Origin: Prasinococcaceae sp. CCMP 1430
Taxonomy: Eukaryota; Plantae; Prasinodermophyta
Reading direction: 5' to 3'
Assembly (NCBI GenBank): GCA_013416795.1
Contig: RQSC01000029.1
Location: forward strand, 6,458-70,457
DNA length: 64,000 nucleotides
A program made the position numbers and the translations under genes. Under the pieces are notes generated by a model, which was given only the letters and a program-made list of their open reading frames with translations, was not told the origin of the DNA and did no database searches. This document shows positions 1,867 through 19,696 of the stretch, piece by piece (within the stretch, counting starts at the first letter, position 1; every line of letters starts with the position of its first letter).

Positions 1867-2109
1867 GTCGAGAGCTAGCTTCTTGGGAGGGGAAGCTGCT
1901 GTTCGGGAAAGCGTCGAGCGTCAGCAGGCCCTTGCGCGTTAGCTTGCGTGCGGGGAGCGTGTGCGCACACTGCGGGCGGAGCTGCTCGTTCGCCGCCACC
2001 GCTCCCGCAACGAGGCACGGTGCGCCTGCGTGCAGGTGTGGCGCGCACGCGCCGCGGGCGAGCAAAGGCGGCGCGCGCGCGCATCGCGCACACGCCCGCG
2101 CCCGCGGCA

Positions 2110-3507
2110 ATGGCCGGCGGGCGAAGGGGCAGCGCGGCGGCGCAGCAGCCATTCGTGCCTGCGCGCCCCGCGTACGCACTGCCCGAGGACTACCACCGCT
2201 TCGGCCCGGGCATCGATGCGAACGGCCTCGCCGCGAGCGGGCTGCCGCGCGGCGAGAACATCGTGATGGGCGCCCCAGCTGCCATCCTGCAGGGCCTGGC
2301 CGCGCCCGGCCTCGACAAGCCCGGCCTCGACAAGTCCAACGCGGCCGGGGGCGCCACGAGCGGCGTGGCCGCTGCGGCGGCAGATAGGAGCCGCTCACAG
2401 AAAGGCATGGCGTCGCCGACGCCCGCGTCACGCAGCGGGGCCCGCAACGGCGCTCACGCGGCGGGGGGCGCCGCGCCCAGCAACGGGGCGAACGGGGCGG
2501 CCACGACGCCCGCGAAGGCGCCCGGGTCGGCGGCCAGGCGCAAGAGCAGCGGCTCGCGCTCCAAAGCGCCGGGTACGCCGGCCGGCACCACCGGCGGCTC
2601 CCAGAGCGAGCAGCGCACGCCTGGCAGCACGTGCCGCTACGACAGCTCGCTGGGCCTGCTCACCAAGAAGTTCATCTCGCTCATCGAGGAGGCGGACGAC
2701 GGGACCCTCGACCTGAACAGAGCGGCGGACATGCTGTCGGTGCAGAAGCGCCGCATCTACGACATCACCAACGTGCTCGAGGGCATCGGGCTCATCGTGA
2801 AGAAGTCGAAGAACAACATCCAGTGGAAGGGCATGGGGATGGGGGGGGGCGCCTTGGAAGGGCGGCAAGACATGGCGGGGCTGCAGAAGGACGTGGAGGG
2901 GCTGCATGAGGAGGAGCGCCAGTTAGATGAGGAGATCGCGGCGATGCGCGAGAAGCTGCACCTCTTTTGCGAGGATGGCGCCAACAAGCGCCTGCTGTAC
3001 GTGCGGCGCGACGACATCGTCGGGCTGCCCGCGTTCGCGGGGGACACGCTCATAGCGATCAAGGCGCCGCACGGAACCACGCTCGAGGTGCCTGACCCCG
3101 AGGAGGGCATGGACTACCCGCACAGGCGCTACCAGATGATCATGAAAAGCAGCGACGGGCCCATCGAGCTGCTGCTGCTCGCTGATCCTCAAAACGACGC
3201 CAGGCAGCAGCAGCAGCTGTTGCAGGGGCAGCAGCAGCACGCCGGCGCGGCGGGCGCGGCCGACATGGCCGCACCGAGGGAAGTGAAGCGCGAGACGAGC
3301 GACCTGCTTCCCGACGGCATCCCTGGCCTGCCGCCGGCAGAGGCTTTCCTTGACCCCGGCATTGTCGCGCCGACCAGCCCGATGCGTCCTATCCGTCCGC
3401 ACCCTGAGCCTGACGACTACTGGTTCGCGTCCACAGAAGATGGCAAGCCCCACGACGTGAATCTCGCAGAAATGTTTGGCGAGCCCGAAGATGCCTTCTT
3501 CGGCTGA
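2110..3507 (+). CDS. E2F: E2F transcription factor
   Basis: DNA-binding motif [13 protein letters not shown]...[18 protein letters not shown], then coiled coil and marked box ([16 protein letters not shown]), and a C-terminal RBR-binding-like DDYWF motif. Start ATG inferred at 2110. Confidence 0.95.
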
Positions 3508-3982: not shown

Positions 3983-5688
3983 TTAAGCCGCGAGCACGGG
4001 GTCCTCACCCGGCAGCAGCTGGTAGCTGGGCGTCGACTTGGCGATGGTGAGCTCCTCCTCGTTCATGTCGGCGTTGATGGCCGCGAACAGCGGGGTGGAC
4101 ATGTAGCGCTCGGCAGTGTCCGGAAGCATGGTCAGGATGACAGAGCCCTTCTCGGCCTTCTCAGCGACTGTGCGTGCGCATGCGCACGAAGCGGCCGGTC
4201 AGAGTTGGTACGGGCCAATGCAAGCGTCAGGCGCAGACAAGCGCGGGCGCACGCGACGGGCGCGGCGTACGGCGCCAACGCACCCTTGAGCGCCGCCGCG
4301 ATGGAGCCACCACCGCTGATACCGGTGAAGATACCGTTAGTCGCAGCCAGCTTGAGCGAGCACTGCACGGACTCATCGCCGGTGACAGGCACGAGCTCGT
4401 CCATGATGTTCAGGTTGAGGCCATCCTCGCACACCCTGAAAGCGACGCAACGCAATCGGGTTGGGGGGGGGGGGGGGGGGAAGAGTCAGACGATGCGGAG
4501 ATGAGGGAGGTGGAGCGGGCGATGACGCGCAGCGGGCTGGGGGCATTGCAGCGCACGTACTTGGGGATGAAATCCGGGGTCCAGCCCTGCACGGGGTGCG
4601 CAGCGAACGCCGGATGCGACTCCTTGGGAGAGCCATCGGCGTTGCGGTTGGTCTTGATGCCCGATGCAATCAGGCCCGCCGCCTCGGGCTCGGCCAGAGC
4701 GATCTTCGGTGATGCAAGAGGCAGCAGAGGGGAGCGGCGGCGTCAGTTGGTGCGACGAGGGCGAAGATTGCGTGTGCGCGCGCGTGCGCGTGCGTGTGCG
4801 TGTAGGGGCTTTGACGCGACCCCTCCGGTCGTCGGTGGCCCCGGTGTGTCGGAGCGGCGCGTTGCAGGCGGCCCGCGGCGTCCGCAGCGGCACACACCTT
4901 GATGTCAGGGCGCGCGGCCTTGAGCACGCGGCCCACGCCCTGGAACGTGCCACCGGTGCCGTAGCCGGTGACCCAGTAGTCGAGACGCTTGCCAGCGAAG
5001 TCCTTGAGGATCTCAGGGCCGGTCGTGGAAGCATGGTACGCCGGGTTGGCGGCGTTCTCGAACTGGTGGCACAGAAACCAGCCATGCTTCTCGCACAGCT
5101 CCTCGGCCTTGCGCACCATGCCGGTGCCCTTGCCCGCCTTGGGCGTCACGATCACCTTGGCGCCGAGCATGCGCATGATCTTCCTGCGCTCGACGGAGAA
5201 CGGCTCAGCCATGCAGATCACGCAGTTGTAGCCGCGCTGCGCGCACACCATCGCAACCGCAATGCCGGTGTTGCCCGAGGTGGCCTCGACCACGGTGTCA
5301 CCGGGCTTGAGCAGGCCCTTCGCCTCGGCATCGCTAATCACGGAGATGGCGAGGCGATCCTTGACGGACGACAGCGGGTTGAAGAACTCGCACTTGGCGT
5401 AGAGGTCCACGCCCTCCGGGGCCAGGCCCTGGAGCTTGACGATGGGCGTGTCGCCGATGGTCTCGGTGATGTCGTTGTAGATCTGCGCGCTGTGGGGGAG
5501 GGGCGGCGGTGCGCGGGATGGGGGTGAGGCGTGCACGGAAAGGCGCATCAGCGCGCCGCACGCGCCGCTGCGTTCGCGGGCGCTGCGCGCGGGCACGCCG
5601 AGGTTCGCACGCAGGCCACCATCTGGCTGCTAGGCGCGGCGGCCGCCTTGGCGGCCGACGCCTTGGACGCGAGCGAGCACACGGACAT
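3983..5688 (-). CDS. cysK: Cysteine synthase (O-acetylserine thiol-lyase), about 5 exons, short N-terminal targeting-like exon
   Basis: PLP-lysine motif NPLSSVKDR, EATSGNTG, HQFENAAN, GYGTGGT and QGWTPDFIP. GT-AG introns join the exons (exon 1 5688-5620, exon 2 5482 to ~4899); stop TAA at 3983-3985. Confidence 0.92.
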
Positions 5689-6310: not shown

Positions 6311-7608
6311 TCATCTGAGCTGCTCCACGTTCACGAAGCCGTACTGCCGCTGCAGCTGCTGCAGCTCGAGCTGGTCGACCTCCTCGGCGACCTCCTTCCG
6401 AGGGAGGACTTTGAGCTTGCCCCGCGGCATCGGCCAGCTGCACGTGTGAACCACTGCCTTGATGTACACGAGTAGCACCACAAAGCCCATCAGGATGACG
6501 ACCAGCGCGATGAAGAGCGCGTCGGACAGCCCTTGGATGAGCGTCGGCCGGCTCTGGGGCGGGGGCGGAGGGGGCGACGGGGGTGAGGGCGGAGGCGATG
6601 GCAGCGGCGGAGGCGATGGGGGCGAGGGCGGCGACGGCGGCTCGGGCAGTGGGATGAGGATCGCAACGTCCGCCTGGCCGGCGAGCGCCGTGAATCTGCA
6701 CACTGCCGTCGCGTTGGCAGGGACAACCGCATTGCCGCAGCGTACAGGTGCAGCCGCGGCATCGCTGGGCGATGCAAGCGCCTGCCCCAGCTCGACCCAG
6801 TCTGTCGACCCAGATGCGAGGCTGCTGCACACCATCGGCACCTCCCCAAGCAGCTCAACCAAGTCTTGGGCGGGTCCGCCCTCCATCGCTCCCTCCTCTG
6901 CTGCTGCCGCCGCCGTTGCGAGCGGCAGTCTACGCAGCGCAATGGCGTGCCCAGTGGGAGCGGTGAGGGCCGCGAGTGACTCGAAGGGCTCGCCCGGCGC
7001 GACAGAGAGCTGCGCGTCGACGCTCACGAGCGTCGAGGCAACGGCGGCGCCCGCCCCCGGCAGCGACACTAGGGCTGGAGCGACCAGGCCATACCATGAA
7101 GGCTGCCAGACAGAAGAAAGGAGTGTGTGTGTGGAGCGGGGGGGAAGGGGGGAGGGCGAGATGGCCGAGTCAGCGGGCAGCACGAATGCGGGCATGCGCG
7201 CGCGTGCGTTTGTGCGCTCACTCGCCGCTCGCATACCTGTGCTGCCTCCTGCGGTGTGTGCGCCGTCGTGAGCGGCGCAAGTGGTGGCGGCACCGGTGGT
7301 AGGCACCTGTACGCCGTGAGCGTTATCCTTAGCGTGCCGTCCGGGGCGGCCGCGAGGAGGGTATCGGTGCTGAGGCCGCCCGCTGTTGCGCGCGTCACGC
7401 GCACGCCGCGGGGCACGCGCAGTGTGACGCCGCCGTCGGCTGCACCGACGTTCACGCCATTGCGGAAGGCGTGGCGTGCGCCGACGTTCACGGTGTACGC
7501 ATCTAGCGTCGTGCCTGCACGCACCGCGTATTCGGGCTCGCCAGCTGTTTCTGCGCGCGCCTGAAGCGCTGCCGACCACGCCACGAGCGCCACCGCTGCT
7601 GCGCGCAT
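6311..7608 (-). CDS. Uncharacterised type I membrane protein (signal peptide, SPPP-rich stalk, C-terminal TM helix), 2 exons
   Basis: Exons 7608-7237 and 7102-6311 join in phase 0 via a GTATGC...CAG intron. Hydrophobic N-terminus, PPSPPSPPP tract and TM segment LFIALVVILMGFVVLLVYI. Confidence 0.65.
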
Positions 7609-8021
7609 CGCGGCCGGCGCGCGGCCGGGCGCCTCAGGCGCGCCGCGTCATCCCACGCGTCCAAAGCCCCCTCCCCAACCCCCACCCGCACCGCCCACGC
7701 GGCGCTCACCCGCCCTCGGCCCTCCGCTTGTCCCGTGGTGTGACGCCCGCCGCACTACGCCGCGGACCGATGCGTCCCGTTGCGCGCGCGAGTCGCGAAC
7801 GTTTCTACGATGGTGCATGTACACCTGGGCAGCGCTGCTCACCCCAGGTCTGTGCAGGCATTCCCCGCTCATTTTCGGGATAATGTGCGTTTGCCAAAAA
7901 TTTCCCCCTAGGTTTTCTCAGGGGGCACAACTGATACTGTAGCAGCAGACGCGGCGTGCGGCCGGTGCGCGGCAGCGGGCGCCATAGTGCGCGCGGCGGG
8001 CGGGGCGCCCCCCCCCCCACG

Positions 8022-9527
8022 ATGGCGCTCGTTGCGGCGGGGTGGCGGGCGGCGGCTGCTGCCGCAGCGGCGGCAGCGGCGGTCGCGGGGGGAGCACCAG
8101 GGGCAGCGGGGGGGGCGGGGGCAGCCTTTGGGATGGCGGCGCGGCTCCCGCTGCGATATGGGGGAATTCAAAGGGCGCGCCTTGTGCGACGAGGGAGCGA
8201 TATGCTCGCTGCACTGCACTGCTCGCCCTCCGTGGCAGCTTCCATGGCCACGAACGCCCACAGCGCCAGTTCAGGGCTTCCGCCAGCGATCCTCTTCCTG
8301 GGCCCACCTGGCGTAGGCAAGGGCACGTACGCGGCGCGGGTCGCGTCACACCTGGGCGTGCCGCACGTCGCCGCAGGCGACCTTGTACGCGACGAGATTG
8401 AGAGCGGAACACCGCTGGGGAAGGCCGTCGCCGCGCACATCGCTGACGGAGGCATGCTCCAAGACGAGGAGGTGTTCGAGCTCGTGTCCAAGCGGCTGGC
8501 CACAGGAGACGTCTCTCGCGCCGGCGTGGTCCTTGACGGCTTCCCGCGCTCAGTTCGCCAGGCGCAGATGCTCGAGTCCGCCGCACGCGCGGATGTCGTC
8601 GTCAACCTCGGCATGCGCGAGGAGGCACTCGTCTCGAAGCTGCTCGGACGCGCGACGTGCGCCAACTGCGGCGCGAGCTACAACACCGCCGAGGTCGACC
8701 TGCCGGAGGTCCCTGAGCAGGGGAAGCCTGCGGTGTTTCTGAAATCGTTGCCAATGCCCGAGGCTGGATGCCGCGAGTGTGGACACACCGAACTTGTGCG
8801 CCGAGCTGACGACGACGAGGCGGTCATCTACAAGAGGCTGCGCGCGCACGAGGTTCAGTGCGCTGGCGTTGCCAACCACTACCGCAACAAGGCGACCAGC
8901 GACAGCGACATGCGTGTGGTGGACTTCGAGATCACCTCGGGGATCCCCGAGACGCTGCCACTTCTCATAGACGCAGTGGTGGGTCCGGGCACGAAGGTTG
9001 GCGTGCCAGCCGGCGACGAGGCCACCGCCGAGGCGGTCAAGAGGGCGCAGGAGGCAGAAGCCGTCGCACCGAGTTCGGGACACCAGGGTACTGCAGCGGG
9101 GGGCACACAGGCGGCGGCGGCGGCGACAGATGTTGAGCAACAAAACAGTGGCGTGCAAGACAGGACATGGGCGCAAGCGAAGGCACAAGCGCAACCCGAG
9201 GCCGAGCCCGCTCACGAGGACGGTGAGCTGATGTTCGTGTACACATGTGGCCAGTGTGGCACGCGCTCTGCCAAGCGCGTCTCCAAGCGCTCGTACTTCC
9301 ACGGTGTAGTGTTGGTGCGATGCGATGGCTGCAAGGCACTGCACCTGGTGGCGGACCGCAAGGGCTGGTTCGACGACAAGCCCATCGGACTGGAAGAGCT
9401 CGTCGGCGCTGGTGCGACCATACTGCCCAGCGGCGATGTGACGCTATCACCAGATGATGCGGAGCGCGTGAAAGAGGCCATGTCAGTGCCTCGGCGCAGG
9501 CCGGGGACATCAGGGACCAATTCTTAA
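8022..9527 (+). CDS. ADK: Adenylate kinase (plant organellar type) with a C-terminal DNL-type zinc finger (Zim17/Tim15/HEP-like)
   Basis: P-loop GPPGVGKGT, LDGFPR and RADD in the kinase. C-terminal FVYTCGQCGTR...Y..GVVLVRCDGCKALHLVADRKGWF matches the zf-DNL consensus. One continuous ORF; start codon uncertain. Confidence 0.85.
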   Translation: MALVAAGWRAAAAAAAAAAAVAGGAPGAAGGAGAAFGMAARLPLRYGGIQRARLVRRGSDMLAALHCSPSVAASMATNAHSASSGLPPAILFLGPPGVGKGTYAARVASHLGVPHVAAGDLVRDEIESGTPLGKAVAAHIADGGMLQDEEVFELVSKRLATGDVSRAGVVLDGFPRSVRQAQMLESAARADVVVNLGMREEALVSKLLGRATCANCGASYNTAEVDLPEVPEQGKPAVFLKSLPMPEAGCRECGHTELVRRADDDEAVIYKRLRAHEVQCAGVANHYRNKATSDSDMRVVDFEITSGIPETLPLLIDAVVGPGTKVGVPAGDEATAEAVKRAQEAEAVAPSSGHQGTAAGGTQAAAAATDVEQQNSGVQDRTWAQAKAQAQPEAEPAHEDGELMFVYTCGQCGTRSAKRVSKRSYFHGVVLVRCDGCKALHLVADRKGWFDDKPIGLEELVGAGATILPSGDVTLSPDDAERVKEAMSVPRRRPGTSGTNS

Positions 9528-9732
9528 GCGATCAGCGACAGATGCAATTTTTCCACCCTTTGCTCTGCATTACGTGCGGCGCCAGCAAGACGAGAAGGGC
9601 GCCCCGGCGACATGCACGCACGCAATCGCACGCACGCGCGCGCGCCATACTGGCAGGCCCCGGCGCCTCTTTGACACGCTGTCTTACGATGCTCTTGGTA
9701 CGGCAGGAACCCGCCGTGGTCCCCCGTTGCTG

Positions 9733-10806
9733 TCATCCTTTGACGATGTCAGTGAAGCTAAGCGCCCGTGACTTGGCTTCGTAGTCTCCTGTGCCGAGAG
9801 CTTGCTTGGTCGCCTGCGTGGCGGCCGCCAGCGTCACCCCAAAGTCCATATATGACGCCTTGGTCTCAAGCCACACAGCATCAAGCGCCTCGAAAGTGAA
9901 GGCATACAGCGAGTCGAAGGCTCGTGCGCCGTGCGCTCCATGGACGGAGAGCTGCTCAGCGAATGCGTGCAGCTCTGGCGATGTCGCGTGGGCCGGGATG
10001 ACGGCGCCGCCGGGCTCTGCTGGCGTCTCTGATGCCCCGACGGCAGCGCCGTTGTCAGTGTTTCCCCCCGCCAGCGCTGCCACCAGCGCCGGGTCGCGCA
10101 GGCCCAGCATCGACATCAGAGCGAAGGTGATGTTGACACCCGCCACCGCAAAAGGGTACTCAATGGACGCGCGTGTACCGCGGCTTTTGTTGAGCAGCGC
10201 AGAGAACGCCTGGGGGAAGTGCTGGTGCAGCCCCAGGAGGTTGTCGAGCCCCATCACGCCGCCCCCGCGGAAGTCCGTCGCAGGGTCCTTCCCCTGCCAG
10301 CCCATGTCTTTCCAGCGCTCGCTCGGCCCGCCATCGCTCGGGAGGTCACGGGGGAATGCTGCGGTCCACAACCGGGCCAGAGCGGCGCGATGCTCCGGGT
10401 TGTCGCCGTCAAACATGACCGCTGATCGCGCCACCAGTCCACGCAGCCTCCCTGCGGCGAGGGCACCGAGCACCAGCGGCTTGCCGCCTCGGCCCTTGTC
10501 CTTGCCGCCGAAGCCGCCCCCCCCTCGCTTGACGACGACGGCGCTCACGTTCGTCACTGCATCCAGGATCTTGCGCCATCCTGCCACGAGCGCTCTCAGA
10601 AGCGCCGCCCACACCTGCTGCTCGCGCTGCGAGCTGTCCGCCTCGCCACCGGCCCGCTCGTCGCCAGCCTGCTCATCTCCCGCGAGCAGCGGCGCGCGCA
10701 GCGCCGCGCCCTCCCCGTTGGCGGCGCCCCTTGGCATCCATCCGTCCTTGTCCCAGTGGCTGCCCCCGCCGCTCCCACGCCTGCGCCTCAGCCCCCCATC
10801 GCCCAT
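9733..10806 (-). CDS. ELMO/CED-12 domain-containing protein (ELMOD-like)
   Basis: WKDMGWQGKDPATDFRGGGVMGL and EYPFAVAGVNIT motifs. ATG at 10806 inferred. Confidence 0.9.
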   Translation of the reverse strand: MGDGGLRRRRGSGGGSHWDKDGWMPRGAANGEGAALRAPLLAGDEQAGDERAGGEADSSQREQQVWAALLRALVAGWRKILDAVTNVSAVVVKRGGGGFGGKDKGRGGKPLVLGALAAGRLRGLVARSAVMFDGDNPEHRAALARLWTAAFPRDLPSDGGPSERWKDMGWQGKDPATDFRGGGVMGLDNLLGLHQHFPQAFSALLNKSRGTRASIEYPFAVAGVNITFALMSMLGLRDPALVAALAGGNTDNGAAVGASETPAEPGGAVIPAHATSPELHAFAEQLSVHGAHGARAFDSLYAFTFEALDAVWLETKASYMDFGVTLAAATQATKQALGTGDYEAKSRALSFTDIVKG

Positions 10807-11131
10807 CGCCGCGCCACGCCACCCACCCCGCCGCGCCGCCTGCGCGCGCGCTCTGGCACCCGACTGGCACCCGCCCCCGGCCCGCCGCACCCCCCCACCG
10901 CTGCGGCGCGCAGCAGCAGCGCCGCGTGCGCGCGCCCATTCGGCGGGAAAGACCGGCCATCCGAAGAGGGTCCACGGATGTTCGAGAAAACCAAGCGTTT
11001 TGACCTTAAGTTAACGCGCGAAGTGGTTTAGGGTTCGGACCCTCTGACTGTACGTACAGTAAGAACTTAATTTACACGAATGGGGCGGCACTGAGGGTGC
11101 GAGGAACGGCTGGCGGTTTGCCCTCAAGCGC

Positions 11132-14100
11132 TCACGAGCCCGAGGCATCCGGCTGCTCTCCTGATTCCGCTTGGCTGCCCTGACGCGACGATTCCGTGAT
11201 GGACGGCATGAGGTCCATCGGGTCAACAGCGCGCAGGTTGAAGTCCGCCGTGTGCTCGGGCGCACTTGCCACGCGCCTGTGTGCCGAGCCACCCAGGCTC
11301 CTGCCTGACCTCGAGGAGGGTCCCCCTCCGGACTCACCGACCATCCCCAGGCGAGATGAATCGAGGCGGTTGAAGTCGACGTTGGCTGTCCTGGTGCGCC
11401 GGTGCTTGCTCCTCTTCTTCTTCTCGGGGCTAAGAAATTGGAAGGCTTTCGCCATCTGCTGCGCCTCGCCCGCGCTGATGGCGCCGCTCTGCCTGCGGAT
11501 GGTGTCGACGACCGTCTCGCGTTGCCACAGAGAACTGAGCGATGCCAGAACGTCTGGATCGGAAGAGCCACGCGACGTCCTGCGGCGGCCAGGTACGGCG
11601 CGCATGTCACGAGCGAATTCGACGTCGCGGAAGTCGCCACTCAGCGAGCCCAGTCGACTGCCGAAGGATGGAACCTTCGGGAGCGATGCGCCCCTCGAGC
11701 GACTCGAGCGACCCGCGCGCACGGGCGATCCAGGCGTCGGTGTCGCCGGAAGCGTTTCCACATTCAGAGGCTTGGTGATGACGCGGCTGTTGAATGACGG
11801 CCACGCCGCACCAGCCGCCACAGCTGAAATCGGTGCCACCGGGGCCACCGGCTCCGAGCTCGCCTCTGCATTGGGCTGTGTGCTACAGTCGTCGACAGCA
11901 GCCTTGACCACAGCCTCGGCACCGTCGCCGCTCTCCTTTGGAGTTTCAGCCCACTTGTTTGCAAGCCAGCCGCTCTCGATTTCCTGCAAGATGCCAACGT
12001 CGCCAGGGACCAGCAAACGCTTGGCGCCTACGAGGAGCATGTCGGGCAGCAGCGAGGTCACCACGGCGAGCGTGTACACCAACAGCCAACCAGGCGCGGT
12101 CTCGAGGTACTTCCACATGCCAGCCATATGGGGAAAACGCTGCTGCCAGCCCCACAAGGAGGAGCACGCGTAGAGGAACGGGAACCACAACGCAATCGAT
12201 ATCACCACGATGGACGCCCACTGAGGCCACGACCACCTGCACACGATCATGCCGATGCGCACATTCACAACGGTGATGCAGATGGTATACGCCACCACGC
12301 CGAGGAGCACCACCCCGCCAGACTGCATGCCGTCGTCAGCGGCGACCATACCGGGGTAGACCAAGAAAGGCACGTAGAAGACCACGAGCGAGTGCCAGAG
12401 CGCCAACACTATCCAGCCCGCAAAGCGCGGGAGGTACACGCTACGCATGGCACTAATAGCGACATGATCGTACACCGAGGGTGACTGCAGCACCGCCTTG
12501 TCGGACAGGTCCTTGTCGAAGATTGCCACTGCGATCGTGGGCAAGCTGGTCCAGAACATGTTGTACGTCGAGATCAGCGCCGCGGGATAAAAGGCCTGCG
12601 CCGAGAAGGCACTGTAACACGCGAAGTAGAAATTGGCCATGACGTACACGATGTTCTTGTAGAACGCGTAGCACACGAGGTCGGCGTTGCGCCGCTGGCT
12701 CTGACGGCCATGCACGAGGACCAGACGTTGCAGGTACGCGAACTGCGCCAGCGCAAAGTCAGACGCCAGCACCGCGCTCATGCCCTCTTTGCCTGAGATA
12801 CCAACGCCTACGTGCGCGTGCTTGATCATCGGCACATCGTTAGCACCGTCGCCGATCGCCAGCGTTGCCAACCCTTGCGGCGATTTCTCCTTCACCAGGG
12901 AGGTGATGGCCGCCTTTTCGAGTGGGCTCACACGGCAGCACACGACACTTTCGCACTGCGTACACAGCTGATGGAAGAGATCGCGGGAGTCGTCCCCTAG
13001 CAGATGGCGCACCGCCGATCCTTCGATGACCAGGCCGCACGGGGCCACGCTCGTGGTGTCCTCAGGCTGGTCAATGCCTGTCGCTGGATCTCGCGTGCCG
13101 TCGCTCGCCTGTGATAGCCTTGACGGCGACCTCGTGGGAAATCCCGACTCGATGCTGCTCTGCAATTTTTGGAGGAGCCCGTGGTCGGCTTCGTCCTCGT
13201 TCATTATGAATGAACCCGTCGAGCTACACCTCTGTAGCCTTGACGGCGACCTCGTGGGAAACCCCGACGCGATGCTGCTCTGCAATTTTTGGAGGAGCCC
13301 GTGGTCGGCTTCGTCCTCGTTCATTATGAATGAACCCGTCGAGCTACACCTCTGCATCTTGGAGCGGAACCCGTGCTCGCTGTCGTCTTCGTTCATGATG
13401 AATGAGCCGGTCGAGGTACGTGCATCCGATGTACGCGGCACGTCGCTCCAGTCATCGCTGTCGCTCCCCGACGCGGTGTACGCGCCGTAGGTGGCCGCGG
13501 GAGGCGTCCCGAGGTGCGTTTCCGACGGCGCCTTCACCATCTTGCCCCTGCCCTCCGGCGTCCCCTGCTCAACGACATCTTTGCCACAAGCCAGTGTTGC
13601 GGCGCGGGAGGTCTCACGCAGCAAGTTCCGCAGCGCGTCTGCCGGATTGTGGACCACGTCCTCCTCCCTGACGATGACTAGCTTCATCCATTCCTTGAGC
13701 AGGCTGCAGGTAAGGGCGATGGAGATGGCAGTCTCGAGCTTGTCGCCCGTGAGCATCCATACCTGGATGCCCGCCTCGCGAAGAGCATCGATAGTCTCGG
13801 GGACGCCCTCTTGCAGTTTGTCTTCCACAGCGGTCGCACCAAGCAGCTCGAGGTTCGTCTCGAGCCGCGCAGCACAAGCGCCCACCTTCTCCGATCGATT
13901 CTCCAGCGACACACTGGCCTCTTTGTACTCCTTAGCCCACTCATTCCATTCTTCCTCGGCGAGCACTCGGCGGCCGACGCAGAGGGTGCGCAAGCCGAGG
14001 CGCGCGTAGGTATACAGGTCCCTTTGTGTGACCTCGAGATGCTCCTGCGCGGGCGCGATGCGTTCGAGGATCACGCTGTCCGCACCCTTGCAGTAGACGA

Positions 14101-16937
14101 TCACCTCCCCTGTCGCTTGGCTGCGGCACACCGTGCTCATGCGCTTGCGATCCGATGAAAACTCGAGCACAGCGAGCACCTCGAAGACCTCGTCGACGCA
14201 CGCATCATCGGGCCCGGCTCCCTCATATCGGATGACCGCCTTGTCCGGTGTACGCGACACAAGCCGACATCCGCATTCCGCCACGCCCGTCACTAGGGCG
14301 TCTTCATCCGGTGAGGTGGCCTGGTACTCGAGTTGACCGTCTGTGCCGACGGCCGGGACCACCGTGTTGCAAAGTGCGAGGCATTCGAGGAAGCGTCTCG
14401 TCGCCTCCTCCTGGATGTCGAGGTGGAGCGTGTTCGACATCCGCCGCTGCCGTTGGTCATGTCCTGTTGAAGCATAGCTGCTTGCATCGCCACTGCCCAC
14501 TTTCAGGTCCACCTCGGACGGCGACCTCGGCTCAGAGTCGCCGGCCTCGTTCGACACCTGCGTGCGTGTGCGGACGAGCTCTGGCAAACACCTTGTCACG
14601 AGCTCCTGCACGGAACCATCGCGCGCCACGGCATGCACAGCGGCACACCCTTCCTTGACCCCCTGTGCCTGCCCCGTTGGAAATTTCCCTGGCGGATCGG
14701 TCCCTTCGCCAAAACGCACCCCGCGGATGCTCGTCGCGACGAATGCCATCCTGTTCTGCGTAAGCGTCCCTGTCTTGTCGCTCAGCACGCACGAGATGCA
14801 GCCCAGCTCCTCGTTGAGGTTTGTGGTCCGACACTGTGCTGGTGTGTCCGTTTCCTCGTGGTACATGGCAGCGTCGCGCATGATGAAGTAACACTGTCCA
14901 ACCTCTGCGCGCGGAGGTTTGGTGCGCGTGCGCGCGCGCCCGCGTGTGCGCGCGCCCGCGTGTGCGAGCGCAGGTAGGAGCAATGGTCAGATACAATGCA
15001 CAACATGGCGAAAGAAATGCTCGCACGGCCGACTGCGAAGGCGCCAACGCGCAGCTGCGATGACGTACTGACACACTCCAGCGAAATGTACAGGCTGATT
15101 GGTATGAGCTGCGCCATGAGGATGACGAAGCGCAGCGTCTGTGTGAGAACGCCAAGGGCACCCGCCCTGTACTCGGGCCACGCATCATCCTGCGATCCCA
15201 GGTAGTAGTGTCCCTTCGATGACGTCGTCCACCAGCCGTGCGAGGCGATCGCACTGATCAGGCATAACACAATCTGGAAGCTGAAGACGATTGGGACCAT
15301 CAGATTCATGTGACGCTCGAGCTGGCTAACTTTTCGTGGGGCGACTTCCTCGTTGCGCATGAGGCGCGTGTCTCGCCCGGTGTAGATCACAACGCCGTAC
15401 ACCGCCTCGACCTTGCGTAGCGTTGCTCCGCGCAGCAGAATGTTGTCCGCGACGATGGGTGCGACGAAGCAATCCTTGTTGCTGCCCCTTCCCGACGTGC
15501 CTCCACTAGCTCCTCTTTCCGCGTTTGCGCCCGCCCAACTCCCCTCGACATCCACAGTCCGTCCCGTTTCGGTGCCCCTGACGTTCTCAGCTTCACCGTC
15601 TTGTGCAGCGGCCATCCCCGTCTCCCGCAGATCGGCCCCGTCGGGGGATTGTTCTTGATCTCCCGGCGCGCCGCCGTTCCCACCACCATCGCCGTCGCCG
15701 TCCCCGCCGCCATTACCGCCGCCGTCGCCGCTGCTCTCGCCGCCGCCGTCGCCGCCACCATCAACGCCACCTTCACTTGTGCCTTCCAGTATCGAGTCGG
15801 ACGATGAGAGCGACGAGAACGACCTCAGGACATCGCCATCGACTCTGTATTCGATACTGCCTTCGAACTCATACAGCCGTGGGTTGGGACCCTCAGCGGT
15901 GATGAGAACGCCCTCAAATGCCTCCGCCACGGAGCGCGCCTCGGCCAGAGCGGCGCTCACCAAATCGATGCGCCTGTCTGTGGTGGGCACTGCACGCCCG
16001 ACCTGCCTCGGTGAGGGCTCGGTCGTCTGCACTCCGAGCATTGAGACAGCCTCGTAGTCCGGCGGCGCTGAGACGGCATTCTTGACCTTGAGGTTGGTCT
16101 CGCCATCCAGATTGGCTGTGTTACGGCCCGCGATGCACGGTGGGATCGGTGCGCGCCGGCGCGCCGCCCAAAAAGTTAGTTCGCGCGCGTTCGACCGCCT
16201 CAACTGGGCCCACGCACGCACGCACGCACGCACACACGAGCTGCTATGAAGCATCGCAGCACACGCGCATCCGATTGCAAACCAGCACACGCGCTGCTGC
16301 GTCGCCCGCCGCTGCTCCTCAATGGGGCCCGGGCCACACACAGAGTCGCGCAGTCGCGCGCGCGCGCACCTGTCTCAACGTATGCCACCCCATTGTCCTC
16401 GCTGCTGGAGACGAGCAAGAGGTCCGCGGGAATTTCCTGGTCCTTGTCGACGCGCAGGAGCATGCCCACCTCGACGTTGCGCCACTCGACCCTTCTCTCG
16501 GCGCCCTCTTTGCCGATGACGGCGACCGAGCGCGCGTTGACCTCCCTGTCGCTGATGTGGCGAAAGTAGTCGTCGTAGATTTCCTTGACGGCGTTGACGG
16601 CCAGCACGAGGCCCAGCGGCATCACCGTGGTGAACCAGTGCGTGGGCGACAGGCCTGGGATGAGCTGCAGCGCGGCGATGATGGCGAAGTACACGTTGGC
16701 GACGCGCGTGAACTGCTCGAACATGTTGATCGGCACGAACGTGAGCACTGTGTATTTGGATGTGGTCACCTCGTTGGTGCCGAAGGCGACCTCCTGCGGC
16801 GCAGCGGGGGAGCTGTCCTCGCCTTCCACGCCCACGCGCACCAAGCGCACGCCGCCATCATCGCGCGGGCGCTCGTCGCCGCGCCCGAGCAGCCGCAGCA
16901 CGTGCTCGCAAGCCCCGCGCACAGCCTCGGCCATCAT
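11132..16937 (-). CDS. ALA: P4-type phospholipid-transporting ATPase (ALA flippase), 3 exons
   Basis: NEVTTSKY, NLDGETNLK, PISLYISLE, phosphorylation site DKTGTLT, SPDE, MLTGDKLET and GDGANDV. Exons 16937-16370, 16115-15069 and 14904-11132 splice in frame (ETANLDGET; LECVKVGQ). Confidence 0.95.
13116..13354. repeat. 120-bp in-frame tandem duplication inside the P4-ATPase, with a third degenerate partial copy to ~13415
   Basis: Near-identical units start at 13116 and 13236, giving the protein repeat QRCSSTGSFIMNEDEADHGLLQKLQSSIxSGFPTRSPSRL. Confidence 0.9.
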
Positions 16938-17636
16938 CCCCCACAACCACCACACCACCAACACACACGCACACACACACACCTCCCTAGCGGCCCGCCC
17001 GCCCGCCCTGCCGCGGCAGCAGGGCCCGGCGCGGGCGGCCGCGCTCGCGCACCCGCGCCCGCGCCCGCGCCCCGTCCCAGCCCGACCTGACCGCCTCACC
17101 GCCTGACTGCGCGCGCGGCGCGCGCTCGGGGAACGGCGGCCCAGCCAGTCGATCAGAATCTGATGCAAGGCGGAATGGGACGCGGCGCCGTCCGGCCGAA
17201 GGCACGGCGCAGATCCCGAATCGCAGATTCGGGATCCGTCGATCGATCGAGGCTCGCCTCCTCCGCCGTCCGTCCCAGATCGACCGACCGACCGACCGAC
17301 CGAACAAAACAATGCACGCCGGGCAACCAACCAACATACAGTAACATCCAACCCCCAACCAACCAAAACCGGGTTGCGGGTCTCAGCCCCGGTTGGGACC
17401 TCCTGGATGTGTTGGGGCTGACTGTATTGTGAACTCGTCACTCGTCTAATATTCCTATTCCTTCCAACCTCACGCCCCGACCGACCGACAGATCTAGAGC
17501 CTGGCTGGCGGGGTTGATTGAGCACCAGCCGTCCAGTTTTGATGGTCGGTCCCGCTGCGCTGCGCAAAACCTCAAATAATGGTCGCTGGGAGCGGGGCGT
17601 TCTGGTTCGAATTGGTACGGGTGCCGTCCAAATGGG

Positions 17637-17644
17637 AAACCCTA
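17637..17644 (+). promoter_or_regulatory. Telo-box (AAACCCTA) upstream of WDR46/UTP7
   Basis: Exact AAACCCTA about 330 bp upstream of a ribosome-biogenesis gene, the gene class where plant telo-boxes are known. Function here is inferred. Confidence 0.45.
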
Positions 17645-17974
17645 CATTCCGGGGGCGCGCGACGGCTGGCCAGCCGCCGCCACACCGGCGCGCGCGCGCG
17701 CGGCGGCCGGCGGGGGGGGCGGGGCAGACGGGAGGGGGGCAGAGAGGAGGGCGCGCTCGCGCGCGCGGGGAAGGGAGGGGGGTTCGCGAGGCGGGAAGGC
17801 GAGAAGGGAGGAGAGGGTGCCAGGCGACGAAGGGGGGAGAGGGGGCGCTTGGGGCGGCGGGGGGCCGGGCAGCGGTCGCTTCACGTCGCTTCCGTTCGCT
17901 TCGCGCCGCGTGGCCTCAGCGGGCAGGCGGAGGCGGAGGCTGCGCACGCAGGCCTGGGCGGCGAGGGCTGCGCG

Positions 17975-19696
17975 ATGGCGGCGGGTGGCACCGACGGCGG
18001 CGCGCAGGGCGCGTCGCCCGAAAGCGAGCGCGCGCCGACGCGCGCCGAGCGGCAGGCAGCGGCGACGGTGTCCGCGAAGAAGCGCAAGGCTTCGCTCGAT
18101 GCGGCGACCAAGGCGACAGCCCGCGAGAAATACGCGCGCGCCCCGGGCGACGCCAAGGGTGTCACGACCGCCAAGATGCGCGACAAGAAGCTCAAGGGCC
18201 AGGTCAAGTCGCAGGAGAAGAAGTTCGCTGCGGCCGCGCGCCAGGCGGCGCTCATTGAGCGCTGGCTGCTGCCGTCCGAGGCGGGCTCGCTTGAGGCCGA
18301 CGGCCCGCTGGAACGCACGTGGCGCTTCAAGCAGGACGACATCCGGGCGGCGGTGGACAGGGCGTCGGCGAGGAAGGCGTTCGAGCTAACGCTGCAGGGC
18401 GGCCCCTACCGAGTCGACCTCACGCGGTCGGGCAGGTACGCGCTGCTCGCGGGGCACAAGGGCCAGCTCGCGGTGATGGACTGGAGCCGCCACCACGCGG
18501 TGACCGAGCTCGACGTGCGCGAGACTGTGCACGACGGCGTCTTCCTGCACAACGAGCGCTTCTTCGCCGCGGCGCAGCGCAAGTACACTTACATTTATGA
18601 CCAGCGCGGCATCGAGATTCACTGCCTCAAGAAGCACGCGGGTGCCACGCGCCTGACGTTCCTGCCGCACCACTACCTACTTGCGAGCGTGGGCTCCAAG
18701 GGCGTGCTCACATACCAGGACACAACGTGCGGCGAGGTGGTGGCGCAGCACAGAACAAAGTCGGGCGCGTGTGGCTGCCTCGCACTCAACCCGTGGAACC
18801 AGGTGAGCGTGCTGGGTCATCAAAACGGCACGGTGTCGCTGTGGACGCCAAACATGCCCGCGGCCGTGGCCAAGGTGCTCACGCACCGCGGCAACGTGCT
18901 TGCGGCTGCGGTGGACCCGCATGGGCGATACCTCGTGACGGCGGGCATCGACAGGCAGGTGGCAGTGTGGGACGTGCGCACCTACGCCAAGCTGCACGCG
19001 TACCAAGTGCCCACGCCTGCGACGGCGCTCGAGGTTTCGCAGCGCGGCGTGCTGGCGCTGGCGTACGGCCCGCACGTGCAGCTGTGGAAGGACGCGCTGG
19101 TGGAGAAGGCGCAGGCACCCTACCTCCGCCACTCGTATCCTGGGCGTGGCGCCATCCACGACGTGGCCTTCGTGCCGTACGAGGACGTGCTGTTTTGCGG
19201 TCACGGCAGCGGCGCGGGCACGGTGCTCGCACCGGGTGTGGGTGAGCCGAACTTCGACTCGTTCGTGGCCAACCCGTACGAGACGAAGAAGCAGCGCCGC
19301 GAGCAGGAGGTCCACCAGCTGCTCGACAAGCTGCCGCCCAAGACGATCCAGCTGGATCCTGACCGCATTGGCACGGTCCAAAAGGAGGCCAAGGAAGAGC
19401 AGATCGAGCGCCAGAGGGCTGCGGCGGAGGCGAATCGCTCGACCAACGTCAAGCGCAAGACGGAGGAGCAGGACACGAAAACCAAGCGCGTCAAGGGGCG
19501 CAACAGGGCGTCCAGGCGATTCAAGCGCAAGCAGCAGAACGTCGTAGACGTGGCGCGTTTCCAGGCGGAGGCGAAGGCAGAGGCGCTGGTGAAGAAGGCG
19601 GAGCGTGAGAAGGAGGCACTCAAGGAGAGGCAGCAGCGCCAGGCCGGAGCGATGGGCGACTCGGCTGCACTCTCCAAGCTCTGGGGCAAGCGCTAA
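17975..19696 (+). CDS. WDR46: WD-repeat SSU processome protein WDR46/UTP7 (BING4)
   Basis: LLPSEAGSLEA, GPYRVDLTRSGRYALLAGHKG, LGHQNGTVSLWTP and the C-terminal PGVGEPNFD...NPYET.KQRREQEV..LLDKL (BING4CT) motif. Confidence 0.93.
   Translation: MAAGGTDGGAQGASPESERAPTRAERQAAATVSAKKRKASLDAATKATAREKYARAPGDAKGVTTAKMRDKKLKGQVKSQEKKFAAAARQAALIERWLLPSEAGSLEADGPLERTWRFKQDDIRAAVDRASARKAFELTLQGGPYRVDLTRSGRYALLAGHKGQLAVMDWSRHHAVTELDVRETVHDGVFLHNERFFAAAQRKYTYIYDQRGIEIHCLKKHAGATRLTFLPHHYLLASVGSKGVLTYQDTTCGEVVAQHRTKSGACGCLALNPWNQVSVLGHQNGTVSLWTPNMPAAVAKVLTHRGNVLAAAVDPHGRYLVTAGIDRQVAVWDVRTYAKLHAYQVPTPATALEVSQRGVLALAYGPHVQLWKDALVEKAQAPYLRHSYPGRGAIHDVAFVPYEDVLFCGHGSGAGTVLAPGVGEPNFDSFVANPYETKKQRREQEVHQLLDKLPPKTIQLDPDRIGTVQKEAKEEQIERQRAAAEANRSTNVKRKTEEQDTKTKRVKGRNRASRRFKRKQQNVVDVARFQAEAKAEALVKKAEREKEALKERQQRQAGAMGDSAALSKLWGKR

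What the first reader, a model, noticed from the sequence alone, without database searches (positions are those of the whole stretch)
8022..9527. Adenylate kinase fused to a DNL zinc finger (Hsp70 escort protein)
Seen: one uninterrupted ORF holds a full ADK domain (with CxxC...CxxC in and near the LID), an Ala/Gln-rich linker of about 70 aa and a complete zf-DNL domain. Known: zf-DNL proteins (Zim17/Hep1, plastid HEP2/ZR) are normally stand-alone organellar Hsp70 escorts that act on the Hsp70 nucleotide-binding domain. Inference: the fusion could couple local ATP/ADP balance to Hsp70 activation in an organelle. I know of no described ADK-DNL fusion, which makes this one of the best candidates for real novelty here.
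Basis: partly seen in the sequence, partly recalled or inferred. Interest (0 to 1): 0.7.

Follow-up and report, generated by a model that had tools for sequence, protein, structure and literature searches.

The report
Adenylate kinase fused to Hsp70-escort zinc finger
A marine green alga, probably Prasinoderma coloniale, has one real, transcribed, intron-free gene that joins an intact adenylate kinase to a Hep1/Zim17-type zinc finger by a floppy linker; I found this combination in no other organism and no paper, but whether the two halves cooperate is untested.

Summary
ORF 8022-9527 (+) encodes 501 aa:
- an Ala/Arg-rich N-terminal extension (aa 1-88);
- an adenylate kinase (ADK, Pfam 2.3e-32; model pLDDT above 90) with a four-Cys, probably zinc-binding lid;
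- an 80-aa linker predicted disordered;
- a zf-DNL domain (Pfam 1.8e-21; Tim15/Zim17 1.8e-12), which keeps both CxxC pairs 21 aa apart and the TRS and HLVAD motifs.

Seven environmental assemblies (mostly TARA) carry the same open frame at 98-100% identity. Their only length change is one in-frame codon, in the linker.

RNA-library contigs run colinearly from the kinase to the stop, with no splice and no cover over the intergenic DNA.

The protein already sits unnamed in UniRef and EukProt as a gene model. I found no paper on it.

An exhaustive HMMER scan of 1.84 billion representatives shows no other protein with both domains among its 150 best hits. The nearest kinases (about 50% identity) end right after the kinase.

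Best reading: a lineage-specific, organelle-targeted bifunctional protein whose two modules keep their ancestral activities.

The compartment is unresolved, and I could not check whether the genome has separate HEP genes. The scan's only other note on this is the same stretch read again.

The parts
8022..9527 (+). Complete intron-free coding sequence, 501 codons plus TAA stop, of the ADK-zf-DNL fusion protein
   Evidence: ORF list and translation. Identical or 98-99% identical ORFs in seven environmental assemblies and in UniRef/EukProt. RNA contigs are colinear over 8116-9531, 8623-9496 and 8822-9260.
8022..8285 (+). N-terminal extension, aa 1-88. It is presequence-like: 31 Ala, 7 Arg and a single acidic residue. 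Alternative in-frame starts are M38 (8133), M61 (8202) and M75 (8244).
   Evidence: Composition. Low model confidence. Fast-evolving: 11 non-synonymous against 2 synonymous variable codons, and M75 is Val in some variants. Homologous plant and chlorophyte kinases also carry 45-100 aa extensions. An in-frame stop lies upstream of 7956, and 8022 is the first ATG.
8286..8981 (+). Adenylate kinase core, aa 89-320. P-loop GPPGVGKGT at 8301-8327, GDLVR at 8376-8390, DGFPR at 8535-8549, RRADDD at 8799-8816.
   Evidence: Pfam ADK 2.3e-32. TIGR01351 165.8 bits against a cut-off of 168. PDB sequence hits down to 4.8e-32. AF2 pLDDT above 90. Foldseek hits to Zn-lid ADKs 5g3y and 1zin, TM by target 0.75-0.83. 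Motif positions.
8658..8780 (+). Extended LID with a four-Cys (CANC ... CREC) putative zinc site and a plant-type insertion between the Cys pairs
   Evidence: positions. C213, C216 and C253 are invariant or nearly invariant across 67 homologues. All four Cys are shared with the nearest relatives P0002 and P0045, while plant and chlorophyte homologues keep only three.
8982..9221 (+). Ala/Gly/Gln/Glu-rich linker, aa 321-400, predicted disordered
   Evidence: Composition. pLDDT 30-37. 4 synonymous and 4 non-synonymous variable codons, plus one in-frame one-codon insertion in variant L005/P0026. No homologue aligns here.
9222..9416 (+). zf-DNL (Hep1/Zim17/Tim15-type) zinc-ribbon domain, aa 401-465. 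CGQC at 9246-9257, TRS at 9261-9269, CDGC at 9321-9332, HLVADRK at 9342-9362.
   Evidence: Pfam zf-DNL 1.8e-21. Aligns with yeast Tim15 (2e2z) at 1.8e-12. 47% identical to a stand-alone 133-aa zf-DNL protein, P0180. No variable codons among 8 sequences. pLDDT 57-79.
9417..9524 (+). C-terminal tail, aa 466-501, with one predicted helix (477-488) and no family match
   Evidence: Only 2 synonymous variable codons among variants. No codon-position GC signature.

Best explanation
This is a genuine nuclear gene of a GC-rich marine green alga, probably Prasinoderma coloniale. It is transcribed as one unspliced mRNA.

It encodes a precursor protein with four parts: an organellar presequence, a catalytically intact long-form adenylate kinase with a zinc-type lid, an 80-aa flexible tether, and a Hep1/Zim17-type zf-DNL domain.

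After import into the mitochondrion or the plastid, the two modules most likely keep their ancestral jobs. The kinase equilibrates ATP, ADP and AMP. The zinc ribbon binds the nucleotide-free or newly folding ATPase domain of the organellar Hsp70 and keeps it soluble.

The fusion arose recently in this lineage. It guarantees co-expression and co-import, and it places a kinase near Hsp70 whenever the escort is engaged.

Shown here: the gene, its colinear RNA cover, the integrity of both domains, the disordered tether, and the restriction to one lineage.

Inferred: import, the compartment, kinase activity, Hsp70 binding, and any benefit from proximity.
For: - ORF and domains.
- Catalytic and zinc motifs are intact. 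They are conserved across 67 homologues.
- ADK fold: pLDDT above 90, with Foldseek hits to Zn-lid ADKs.
- The zf-DNL domain aligns with Tim15 at 1.8e-12, keeping the TRS Arg and the His and Asp of HL(I/V)AD. Both CxxC pairs are 21 aa apart, the spacing reported for the family. R81, H107 and D111 of human Hep1 are the reported Hsp70-binding residues (PMC4890766).
- RNA-library contigs cover 8116-9531 with no difference and no joint. They leave 7600-8004 and 9532-9638 empty, as expected for RNA rather than DNA.
- Seven environmental assemblies keep the frame. The zinc finger is invariant, and the only length change is one whole codon in the linker.
- The nearest kinases, P0002 and P0045 (about 50% identity), stop after the kinase. 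P0002 has TGTAA repeats just after its stop; I read these from memory as a green-algal poly(A) signal.
- No other two-domain protein appears among the top 150 of 23,716 hits in 1.84 billion representatives.
- Plant relatives of this kinase type (AK1/AK7/AK8) and all zf-DNL proteins are organellar (PMC7865908; PMC5853452; PMC9695410).
Against: - No experiment shows the 50-kDa protein, its import, or either activity.
- The contigs cannot show transcript ends, so an internal start producing a separate zinc-finger protein is not excluded.
- The true start codon is uncertain (M1, M38 or M61), because a GCG-repeat stretch breaks the contigs at 8037-8115.
- The tripeptide that names the family is D-R-K here rather than D-N-L. 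Yeast Tim15 has D-H-L, so the position is variable.
- The zf-DNL part of the model is only moderately confident, and it rests on two families in the alignment.
- Population variation is too low for a real dN/dS test.
Confidence: 0.55

Rival explanations
1. Functionally coupled module. The zinc ribbon captures nucleotide-free Hsp70. The tethered kinase converts local ADP to ATP (2 ADP to ATP + AMP), or buffers adenylates, right at the open nucleotide site. Nucleotide binding then releases the escort and re-arms Hsp70. The fusion would therefore make Hsp70 recovery less dependent on bulk organellar ATP.
For: Hep1 binds nucleotide-free mtHsp70 or a folding intermediate of its ATPase domain, and ATP or ADP binding triggers its release. 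Hep1 plus ATP/ADP are sufficient for de novo folding (PMC3461517; PMC4890766). The 80-aa disordered tether would let the kinase reach a bound Hsp70. Both domains are intact. The frame is preserved across environmental variants.
Against: The fusion is confined to one species-level cluster, and its nearest relatives lack it, so there is no long-term selection for the join. Adenine nucleotides diffuse fast and are in the millimolar range in organelles (my own knowledge, not checked here), which makes channelling over a floppy tether a weak effect. ADP itself already releases Hep1. No test was done here.
Confidence: 0.25
2. Co-import polyprotein. The single presequence brings both parts into the organelle, and the exposed linker is then cut. 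The cell ends up with an ordinary free adenylate kinase and an ordinary free Hsp70 escort, so the fusion matters only for expression and targeting.
For: The linker is long, low-complexity and predicted disordered, so it is protease-accessible. It evolves freely, with 4 non-synonymous changes and an indel. Stand-alone is the rule for both families.
Against: No processing motif was identified. The linker is acidic (12 Asp+Glu against 5 Lys+Arg) and does not look like a second presequence. I know of no such polyprotein precursor in green algae (my own knowledge, not searched). This cannot be tested from sequence.
Confidence: 0.1
3. The zinc ribbon works in cis on the kinase, as a folding helper or regulator, and no longer on Hsp70.
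For: The D-N-L tripeptide is changed to D-R-K, and the residue before the conserved His is Leu where Tim15 has Arg. Hep-type proteins have chaperone-like activity (PMC4890766).
Against: The TRS Arg and the His and Asp of HLVAD, which line up with the residues reported to bind Hsp70, are all kept. PfHep1 was specific for its Hsp70 and did not protect other test proteins. Related kinases fold without such a domain. The 80-aa disordered spacer argues against a fixed interface.
Confidence: 0.05
4. Artefact: two neighbouring genes read as one, through an assembly or frame error or a missed intron or stop.
For: Automatic gene models disagree on the start (427, 441 and 501 aa). Contigs cannot prove a single transcript (note).
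Against: The same uninterrupted frame is found in the window and in seven independent assemblies. A 1416-base RNA-library contig matches 8116-9531 with no difference. No stop occurs in 1503 bases. The kinase and the zinc finger both show a coding GC signature in the same frame.
Confidence: 0.03

Closest known systems
Hsp70 escort proteins of the zf-DNL family: yeast Zim17/Tim15/Hep1 (PDB 2e2z), human DNLZ/HEP1, Chlamydomonas HEP2, Arabidopsis ZR1/ZR2/ZR3 (Tim15-1/-3/-2)
   Same: Pfam zf-DNL at 1.8e-21. Two CxxC motifs 21 aa apart. The TRS Arg and the His and Asp of HL(I/V)AD are kept. Aligns to Tim15 at 1.8e-12 over 67 residues. Encoded in the nucleus behind a presequence-like N-terminus.
   Different: Known members are small stand-alone proteins, about 100-200 aa. 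Here the domain is the C-terminal part of a 501-aa protein behind a kinase. The tripeptide D-N-L is D-R-K. Which subgroup it belongs to (mitochondrial HEP1/ZR3 or plastid HEP2/ZR1/ZR2) could not be determined.
Plant/green-algal organellar adenylate kinases with an extended lid. From memory, this is the group of Arabidopsis AK1 At2g37250, AK7 At3g01820 and AK8 At2g39270.
   Same: 38-47% identity to chlorophyte and streptophyte proteins of 276-321 aa named adenylate kinase. Same P-loop, the same lid insertion (... YN.A.. L ... P..... P ...) and an N-terminal extension. These are also the nearest ESM Atlas clusters by shape and by features.
   Different: The plant and chlorophyte proteins end 10-40 residues after the kinase and keep only three of the four lid cysteines. 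This protein and its two nearest relatives (P0002, P0045) keep all four. Only this one carries the linker and zinc finger. I did not test the assignment to the Arabidopsis AK1/7/8 group with Arabidopsis sequences.
Zinc-lid adenylate kinases of Gram-positive bacteria (for example Geobacillus stearothermophilus, 1zin; reconstructed ancestor with Zn, 5g3y)
   Same: These are the best solved-structure matches by sequence (4.8e-32, 1.1e-30) and by fold (TM by target 0.75-0.77). They have a four-Cys lid.
   Different: The bacterial lids have about 16 residues between the Cys pairs, against 33 here. They have no presequence and no C-terminal domain.
Other adenylate kinase fusions (ADK-NDK, tandem flagellar ADKs, Arabidopsis AK5 with a C-terminal extra domain)
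   Same: These show that ADK is often joined to other modules. Examples among the hits are P0177 (ADK + NDK) and many multi-ADK proteins.
   Different: None of those examined carries a zf-DNL domain.

Membership tests
Adenylate kinase (Pfam PF00406, long form with LID) | Profile match above the curated threshold | tested here: met
   PF00406 scores 112.6 bits against a cut-off of 26.8. The bacterial-type subfamily model TIGR01351 scores 165.8 against 168, just under its cut-off.
Adenylate kinase (Pfam PF00406, long form with LID) | P-loop GxPGxGKGT and the conserved Arg/Asp of the AMP site and the lid | tested here: met
   GPPGVGKGT at 94-102, GDLVR (R123), DGFPR (R176), GR (R210), RRADDD (260-265) and R272. 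These columns are invariant or at least 90% conserved in 67 homologues.
Adenylate kinase (Pfam PF00406, long form with LID) | ADK fold (CORE, NMP-bind, LID) | tested here: met
   AF2 pLDDT above 90 for aa 89-320. Foldseek probability 1.00 to many ADK structures, TM by target up to 0.83.
Adenylate kinase (Pfam PF00406, long form with LID) | Phosphotransfer activity and nucleotide specificity (ATP:AMP versus GTP:AMP) | not testable with these tools
   Needs an enzyme assay.
zf-DNL / Hsp70 escort protein (Hep1/Zim17/Tim15, HEP2, ZR) | Profile match above the curated threshold | tested here: met
   PF05180 scores 76.3 bits against a cut-off of 27, covering profile positions 2-58 of 64.
zf-DNL / Hsp70 escort protein (Hep1/Zim17/Tim15, HEP2, ZR) | Tetracysteine zinc site: two CxxC motifs separated by 21 residues | tested here: met
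   C409/C412 and C434/C437, with 21 residues between C412 and C434. The spacing is as stated for the family in PMC4890766.
zf-DNL / Hsp70 escort protein (Hep1/Zim17/Tim15, HEP2, ZR) | Residues implicated in Hsp70 binding (Arg after the first CxxC; His and Asp of HL(I/V)AD) | tested here: met
   R415 (TRS), H441 and D445 align with the same residues of Tim15. PMC4890766 names R81, H107 and D111 of human Hep1. The mapping from human numbering to these motifs is my inference.
zf-DNL / Hsp70 escort protein (Hep1/Zim17/Tim15, HEP2, ZR) | The D-N-L tripeptide that names the domain | tested here: not met
   The sequence here is D-R-K (HLVADRKGWF). Yeast Tim15, an experimentally characterised member of the family, has D-H-L, and P0180 has D-N-L. 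The tripeptide is therefore not strictly required.
zf-DNL / Hsp70 escort protein (Hep1/Zim17/Tim15, HEP2, ZR) | Small stand-alone organellar protein | tested here: not met
   The domain is the C-terminal part of a 501-aa kinase fusion. This is the point of difference.
zf-DNL / Hsp70 escort protein (Hep1/Zim17/Tim15, HEP2, ZR) | Nucleotide-sensitive binding to the ATPase domain of organellar Hsp70, preventing its aggregation | not testable with these tools
I did not run complex prediction for that reason.
zf-DNL / Hsp70 escort protein (Hep1/Zim17/Tim15, HEP2, ZR) | Mitochondrial or plastid targeting | tested here: inconclusive
   The N-terminal 88 aa are Ala/Arg-rich with one acidic residue, which is presequence-like. 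No predictor was available, and the start codon is uncertain.

The most novel reading that the evidence does not exclude
The tether turns adenylate kinase into a dedicated nucleotide supplier for the escort-Hsp70 complex. When organellar ATP falls and nucleotide-free Hsp70 accumulates, the zinc ribbon docks the kinase at the empty nucleotide site. There it makes ATP from ADP, which re-loads Hsp70 and releases the escort. That would be a built-in energy-stress rescue circuit for Hsp70, and the first natural case of an Hsp70 co-factor fused to a nucleotide-metabolising enzyme.
Probability: 0.2. Interest if true: 0.7.

Novelty: new variant of a known kind. Interest (0 to 1): 0.45.

Why it matters
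How escort proteins of the Hep1/Zim17 family hand Hsp70 back to its nucleotide cycle is still poorly understood, and the nature of their interaction with Hsp70 is still described as unresolved (PMC3461517).

A natural fusion of such an escort to the enzyme that interconverts ATP, ADP and AMP is a Rosetta-stone hint that nucleotide supply and escort release are linked. It also gives a ready-made construct for testing that in vitro.

If the two halves work independently, the gene is still useful in three ways:
- it shows that this kinase type and this escort share a compartment;
- it corrects the database gene models, whose starts at M61 or M75 drop the probable presequence.

Tried and rejected
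1. Word-index searches with the zinc-finger region. Among proteins of 275-877 aa only the gene's own cluster came back. As a 117-aa piece it found a single stand-alone hit, P0180. The index is clearly insensitive for this short domain, so these blanks are weak evidence.

2. Metagenome scan with a two-sequence zf-DNL alignment. 144 pattern matches, none confirmed. This says only that JGI metagenomes hold no close copy.

3. ESM Atlas by features and by shape. Only ADK-only and zf-DNL-only clusters appeared. Clusters under 50 members are invisible to this search.

4. Longer kinase homologues of 368-621 aa, as possible hidden fusions. They have low-complexity tails, NDK or tandem ADK, and no zinc finger.

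5. Synteny with the nearest relative. The gene downstream of P0002 has no match in the window, and no zinc finger is hidden in any frame there. The origin of the fusion remains unknown.

6. A second zf-DNL in the 64-kb window: none. The rest of the genome could not be searched.

7. The 'joint' 9127 to 8051 reported in two metatranscriptomes (table 5c). It consists of 18- to 32-base matches of GC-rich low-complexity words inside short, deep, unrelated contigs. I rejected it as a splice or rearrangement.

8. dN/dS. There are too few differences, about 1-2% divergence, for a meaningful ratio. Only counts are given.

9. Complex prediction was not run. No cognate Hsp70 sequence was available, a bacterial DnaK surrogate would not have changed my odds, and I do not claim that the two domains bind each other.

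10. Assignment to the mitochondrial or plastid zf-DNL subgroup. I had no reference sequences for ZR1-3, HEP1 and HEP2 other than Tim15.
Full report
**1. What is in the sequence**

The + strand frame is open from 7956 to 9527, and its first ATG is at 8022 (upstream sequence). Translation gives 501 residues.

Pfam places an adenylate kinase domain at aa 93-291 (2.3e-32). It places a zf-DNL domain at aa 405-461 (1.8e-21). The ADK_lid match at aa 210-263 is sub-threshold. NCBIfam's general adk model TIGR01351 scores 165.8 bits against a cut-off of 168.

The motifs lie as follows:
- P-loop GPPGVGKGT at 94-102;
- GDLVR at 119-123;
- DGFPR at 172-176;
- lid cysteines C213/C216 and C250/C253;
- RRADDD at 260-265;
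- zinc-finger cysteines C409/C412 and C434/C437;
- TRS at 414-416;
- HLVADRK at 441-447.

The linker is about 80 aa rather than 70.

**2. Is it one real gene?**

The exact protein, or versions 98-99% identical, form one 90%-identity cluster of 23 members. The cluster includes a 427-aa UniRef entry, a 441-aa EukProt entry and several TARA Oceans metagenome genes.

I fetched seven independent environmental contigs: L001 and L005-L010. All keep the frame open from the kinase through the zinc finger. The only length difference is one extra Gln codon in the linker of L005.

Variable codons by region:

| Region | Synonymous | Non-synonymous |
|---|---|---|
| N-terminal extension | 2 | 11 |
| Kinase | 5 | 4 |
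| Linker | 4 | 4 |
| Zinc finger | 0 | 0 |
| C-terminal tail | 2 | 0 |

The numbers are small. They fit a free-running presequence and linker flanking constrained domains.

GC by codon position shows the same coding signature in one frame for the kinase (0.73/0.45/0.81) and the zinc finger (0.65/0.46/0.78).

**3. Transcription**

Of the runs that hold the stretch, four were laid on 7600-10000:
- A run of the cultured organism, probably a transcriptome, gives a 1416-base contig matching 8116-9531 without a single difference or gap.
- A marine metatranscriptome gives an 874-base contig over 8623-9496.
- A third run gives 8822-9260 and 9283-9555.

None of the four runs covers the upstream intergenic stretch 7600-8004. 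The first also leaves 9532-9638 empty, before the neighbouring gene on the opposite strand. This is the pattern expected of RNA rather than contaminating DNA.

No splice joint was reported inside the gene. The only listed 'joint' (9127 to 8051) comes from 18- to 32-base matches of GC-rich low-complexity words in short unrelated contigs, so I discount it.

Contigs cannot show transcript ends, so an additional internal start is not excluded. The 5' end is hidden by the GCG-repeat region 8037-8115, where contigs break.

**4. The organism**

Earlier notes of this scan name the genome as Prasinoderma coloniale. I did not verify that independently. It fits the window's GC against the 69.8% reported for that genome (PMC7455551). 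It also fits the marine metagenome sources and the plant-type nuclear neighbours: E2F/DP, RWP-RK, a CCT-motif protein, MORN, a P4-type flippase and ELMO.

The genome paper mentions one gene fusion (KYU-HAAO) and says nothing about adenylate kinase or DNL.

**5. The kinase half**

It belongs to the plant/green-algal group of organellar kinases of about 280-320 aa with an inserted lid. Identity is 38-47% to Raphidocelis, Monoraphidium, Dunaliella, Pistacia and Helianthus proteins.

The AF2 model is very confident over aa 89-320. It superposes on solved adenylate kinases, with the zinc-lid enzymes 5g3y and 1zin at the top.

Plant and chlorophyte relatives keep three lid cysteines. This protein and its two nearest relatives, P0002 and P0045 (about 50% identity, from GC-rich marine contigs), keep all four. 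A structural zinc in the lid is therefore likely.

From memory, this group corresponds to Arabidopsis AK1, AK7 and AK8. These are reported as mitochondrial or dual-targeted (PMC7865908; PMC5853452). I did not test that correspondence with Arabidopsis sequences.

**6. The zinc-finger half**

It aligns to yeast Tim15/Zim17 (2e2z) at 1.8e-12 over 67 residues. It is 47% identical to a 133-aa stand-alone zf-DNL protein with its own presequence, P0180.

The family's two CxxC motifs are 21 residues apart, as described in PMC4890766. The Arg after the first CxxC and the His and Asp of HL(I/V)AD are kept. By my mapping, these correspond to the residues reported to matter for Hsp70 binding.

The eponymous D-N-L is D-R-K here. 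Yeast Tim15 has D-H-L, so this position varies in functional members.

Model confidence for this part is moderate (57-79), with very few sequences behind it.

**7. The linker and the ends**

Residues 321-400 are Ala/Gly/Gln/Glu-rich and acidic (12 acidic residues against 5 basic). They are predicted disordered (pLDDT about 30-37) and align with nothing.

The N-terminal 88 residues are Ala/Arg-rich with one acidic residue, like the extensions of the homologous organellar kinases. The database models that start at M61 or M75 cut this off. M75 is Val in some environmental variants, so that start is unlikely to be the true one.

**8. How widespread is the fusion?**

- An exhaustive HMMER search of 1.84 billion representative proteins gave 23,716 hits. 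I screened the best 150 (down to 125 bits) with the linker-plus-zinc-finger part. Only the gene's own cluster matched. A fusion with a recognisable kinase and zinc finger should score above about 140 bits and so would have been listed. A very divergent one could have been missed.
- Ten longer kinase homologues have no zf-DNL.
- The ESM Atlas has no cluster with both families.
- The word-index searches and the metagenome scan found nothing further, but they are insensitive here.
- The nearest kinases end a few residues after the kinase. In P0002 the stop is followed at once by TGTAA repeats, which I read from memory as the green-algal poly(A) signal. Its downstream gene is unrelated to anything in the window.
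- Three full-text searches found no paper that links zf-DNL and adenylate kinase in one protein.

The join therefore looks young and lineage-specific. It is present in databases only as an unnamed model.

**9. How it most likely works**

Published work shows three things. Hep1 binds the nucleotide-free or newly folding ATPase domain (with the interdomain linker) of mitochondrial Hsp70. It prevents that domain from aggregating. It is released when ATP or ADP binds (PMC3461517; PMC4890766). Plastid homologues do the same for stromal Hsp70 (PMC9695410).

Both halves are intact and sit on a flexible tether. The most economical reading is therefore a bifunctional imported protein whose modules keep their ancestral activities. 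The fusion ensures co-expression, co-import and proximity (confidence about 0.55).

It is mechanistically reasonable, but three points weaken it: the fusion is young, small nucleotides diffuse fast, and ADP alone already releases Hep1. I give it about 0.25.

The other rivals are lower:
- cleavage of the linker after import, about 0.1;
- a cis role of the zinc ribbon on the kinase, about 0.05;
- an artefact, about 0.03.

**10. What remains open**

- The compartment (mitochondrion or plastid).
- The start codon.
- Whether separate HEP genes exist elsewhere in the genome. The rest of the genome could not be searched here.
- Whether the protein stays in one piece.
- Any biochemical coupling between the halves.

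I did not run complex prediction, because no cognate Hsp70 was available.

**11. Verdict**

This is a real, expressed and apparently undescribed domain architecture built from two well-known families. I class it as a new variant of a known kind. Interest is moderate (0.45). It would be higher if the coupling were shown, or if the fused copy proved to be the alga's only escort of its class.

Noticed in passing
window 8202-8246 (M61, M75) versus 8022: Public gene models of this protein start at M61 (441 aa, EukProt and several metagenome calls) or M75 (427 aa, UniRef). That drops the Ala/Arg-rich presequence-like N-terminus. Codon 75 is GTG (Val) in some environmental variants, so that start is probably wrong.
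   Followed up: partly
window 8037-8115: A GCG/GCA triplet-rich stretch (Ala run) breaks RNA contigs and attracts short matches from deep, unrelated contigs. It produces a spurious 'joint' 9127 to 8051 in two metatranscriptomes.
   Followed up: partly
window 9733-10890 (-): An ELMO/CED-12 family gene is convergent with the fusion gene, its ORF ending about 205 bp from the fusion gene's stop. Environmental copies are called at 334 or 416 aa, so its start or exon structure is unsettled.
   Followed up: no
L002:1110-1260: The stand-alone kinase of the nearest relative (P0002, GC 69% marine contig) is followed directly by a run of TGTAA-containing repeats (CATGTAAC units). From memory this is probably a reiterated green-algal poly(A) signal. 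No such run follows the stop in the window gene.
   Followed up: no
window 6311-7579 (-): The divergent upstream ORF of 422 aa has a Pro/Ser-rich (SPPPS-type) block and a hydrophobic segment near its C-terminus. It has no Pfam match and could be a cell-surface or wall-type protein.
   Followed up: no
window 1948-3507 (+), 4670-5596 (-), 11132-14983 (-), 17579-19696 (+), 44374-46872 (+), 56412-58886 (-), 61689-63932 (-): The neighbours are ordinary nuclear genes of a green-lineage eukaryote: E2F/DP, a PLP-dependent enzyme, a P4-type phospholipid flippase, BING4/Utp7, RWP-RK, a MORN-repeat protein and a CCT-motif protein. No Hsp70 lies in the window.
   Followed up: partly
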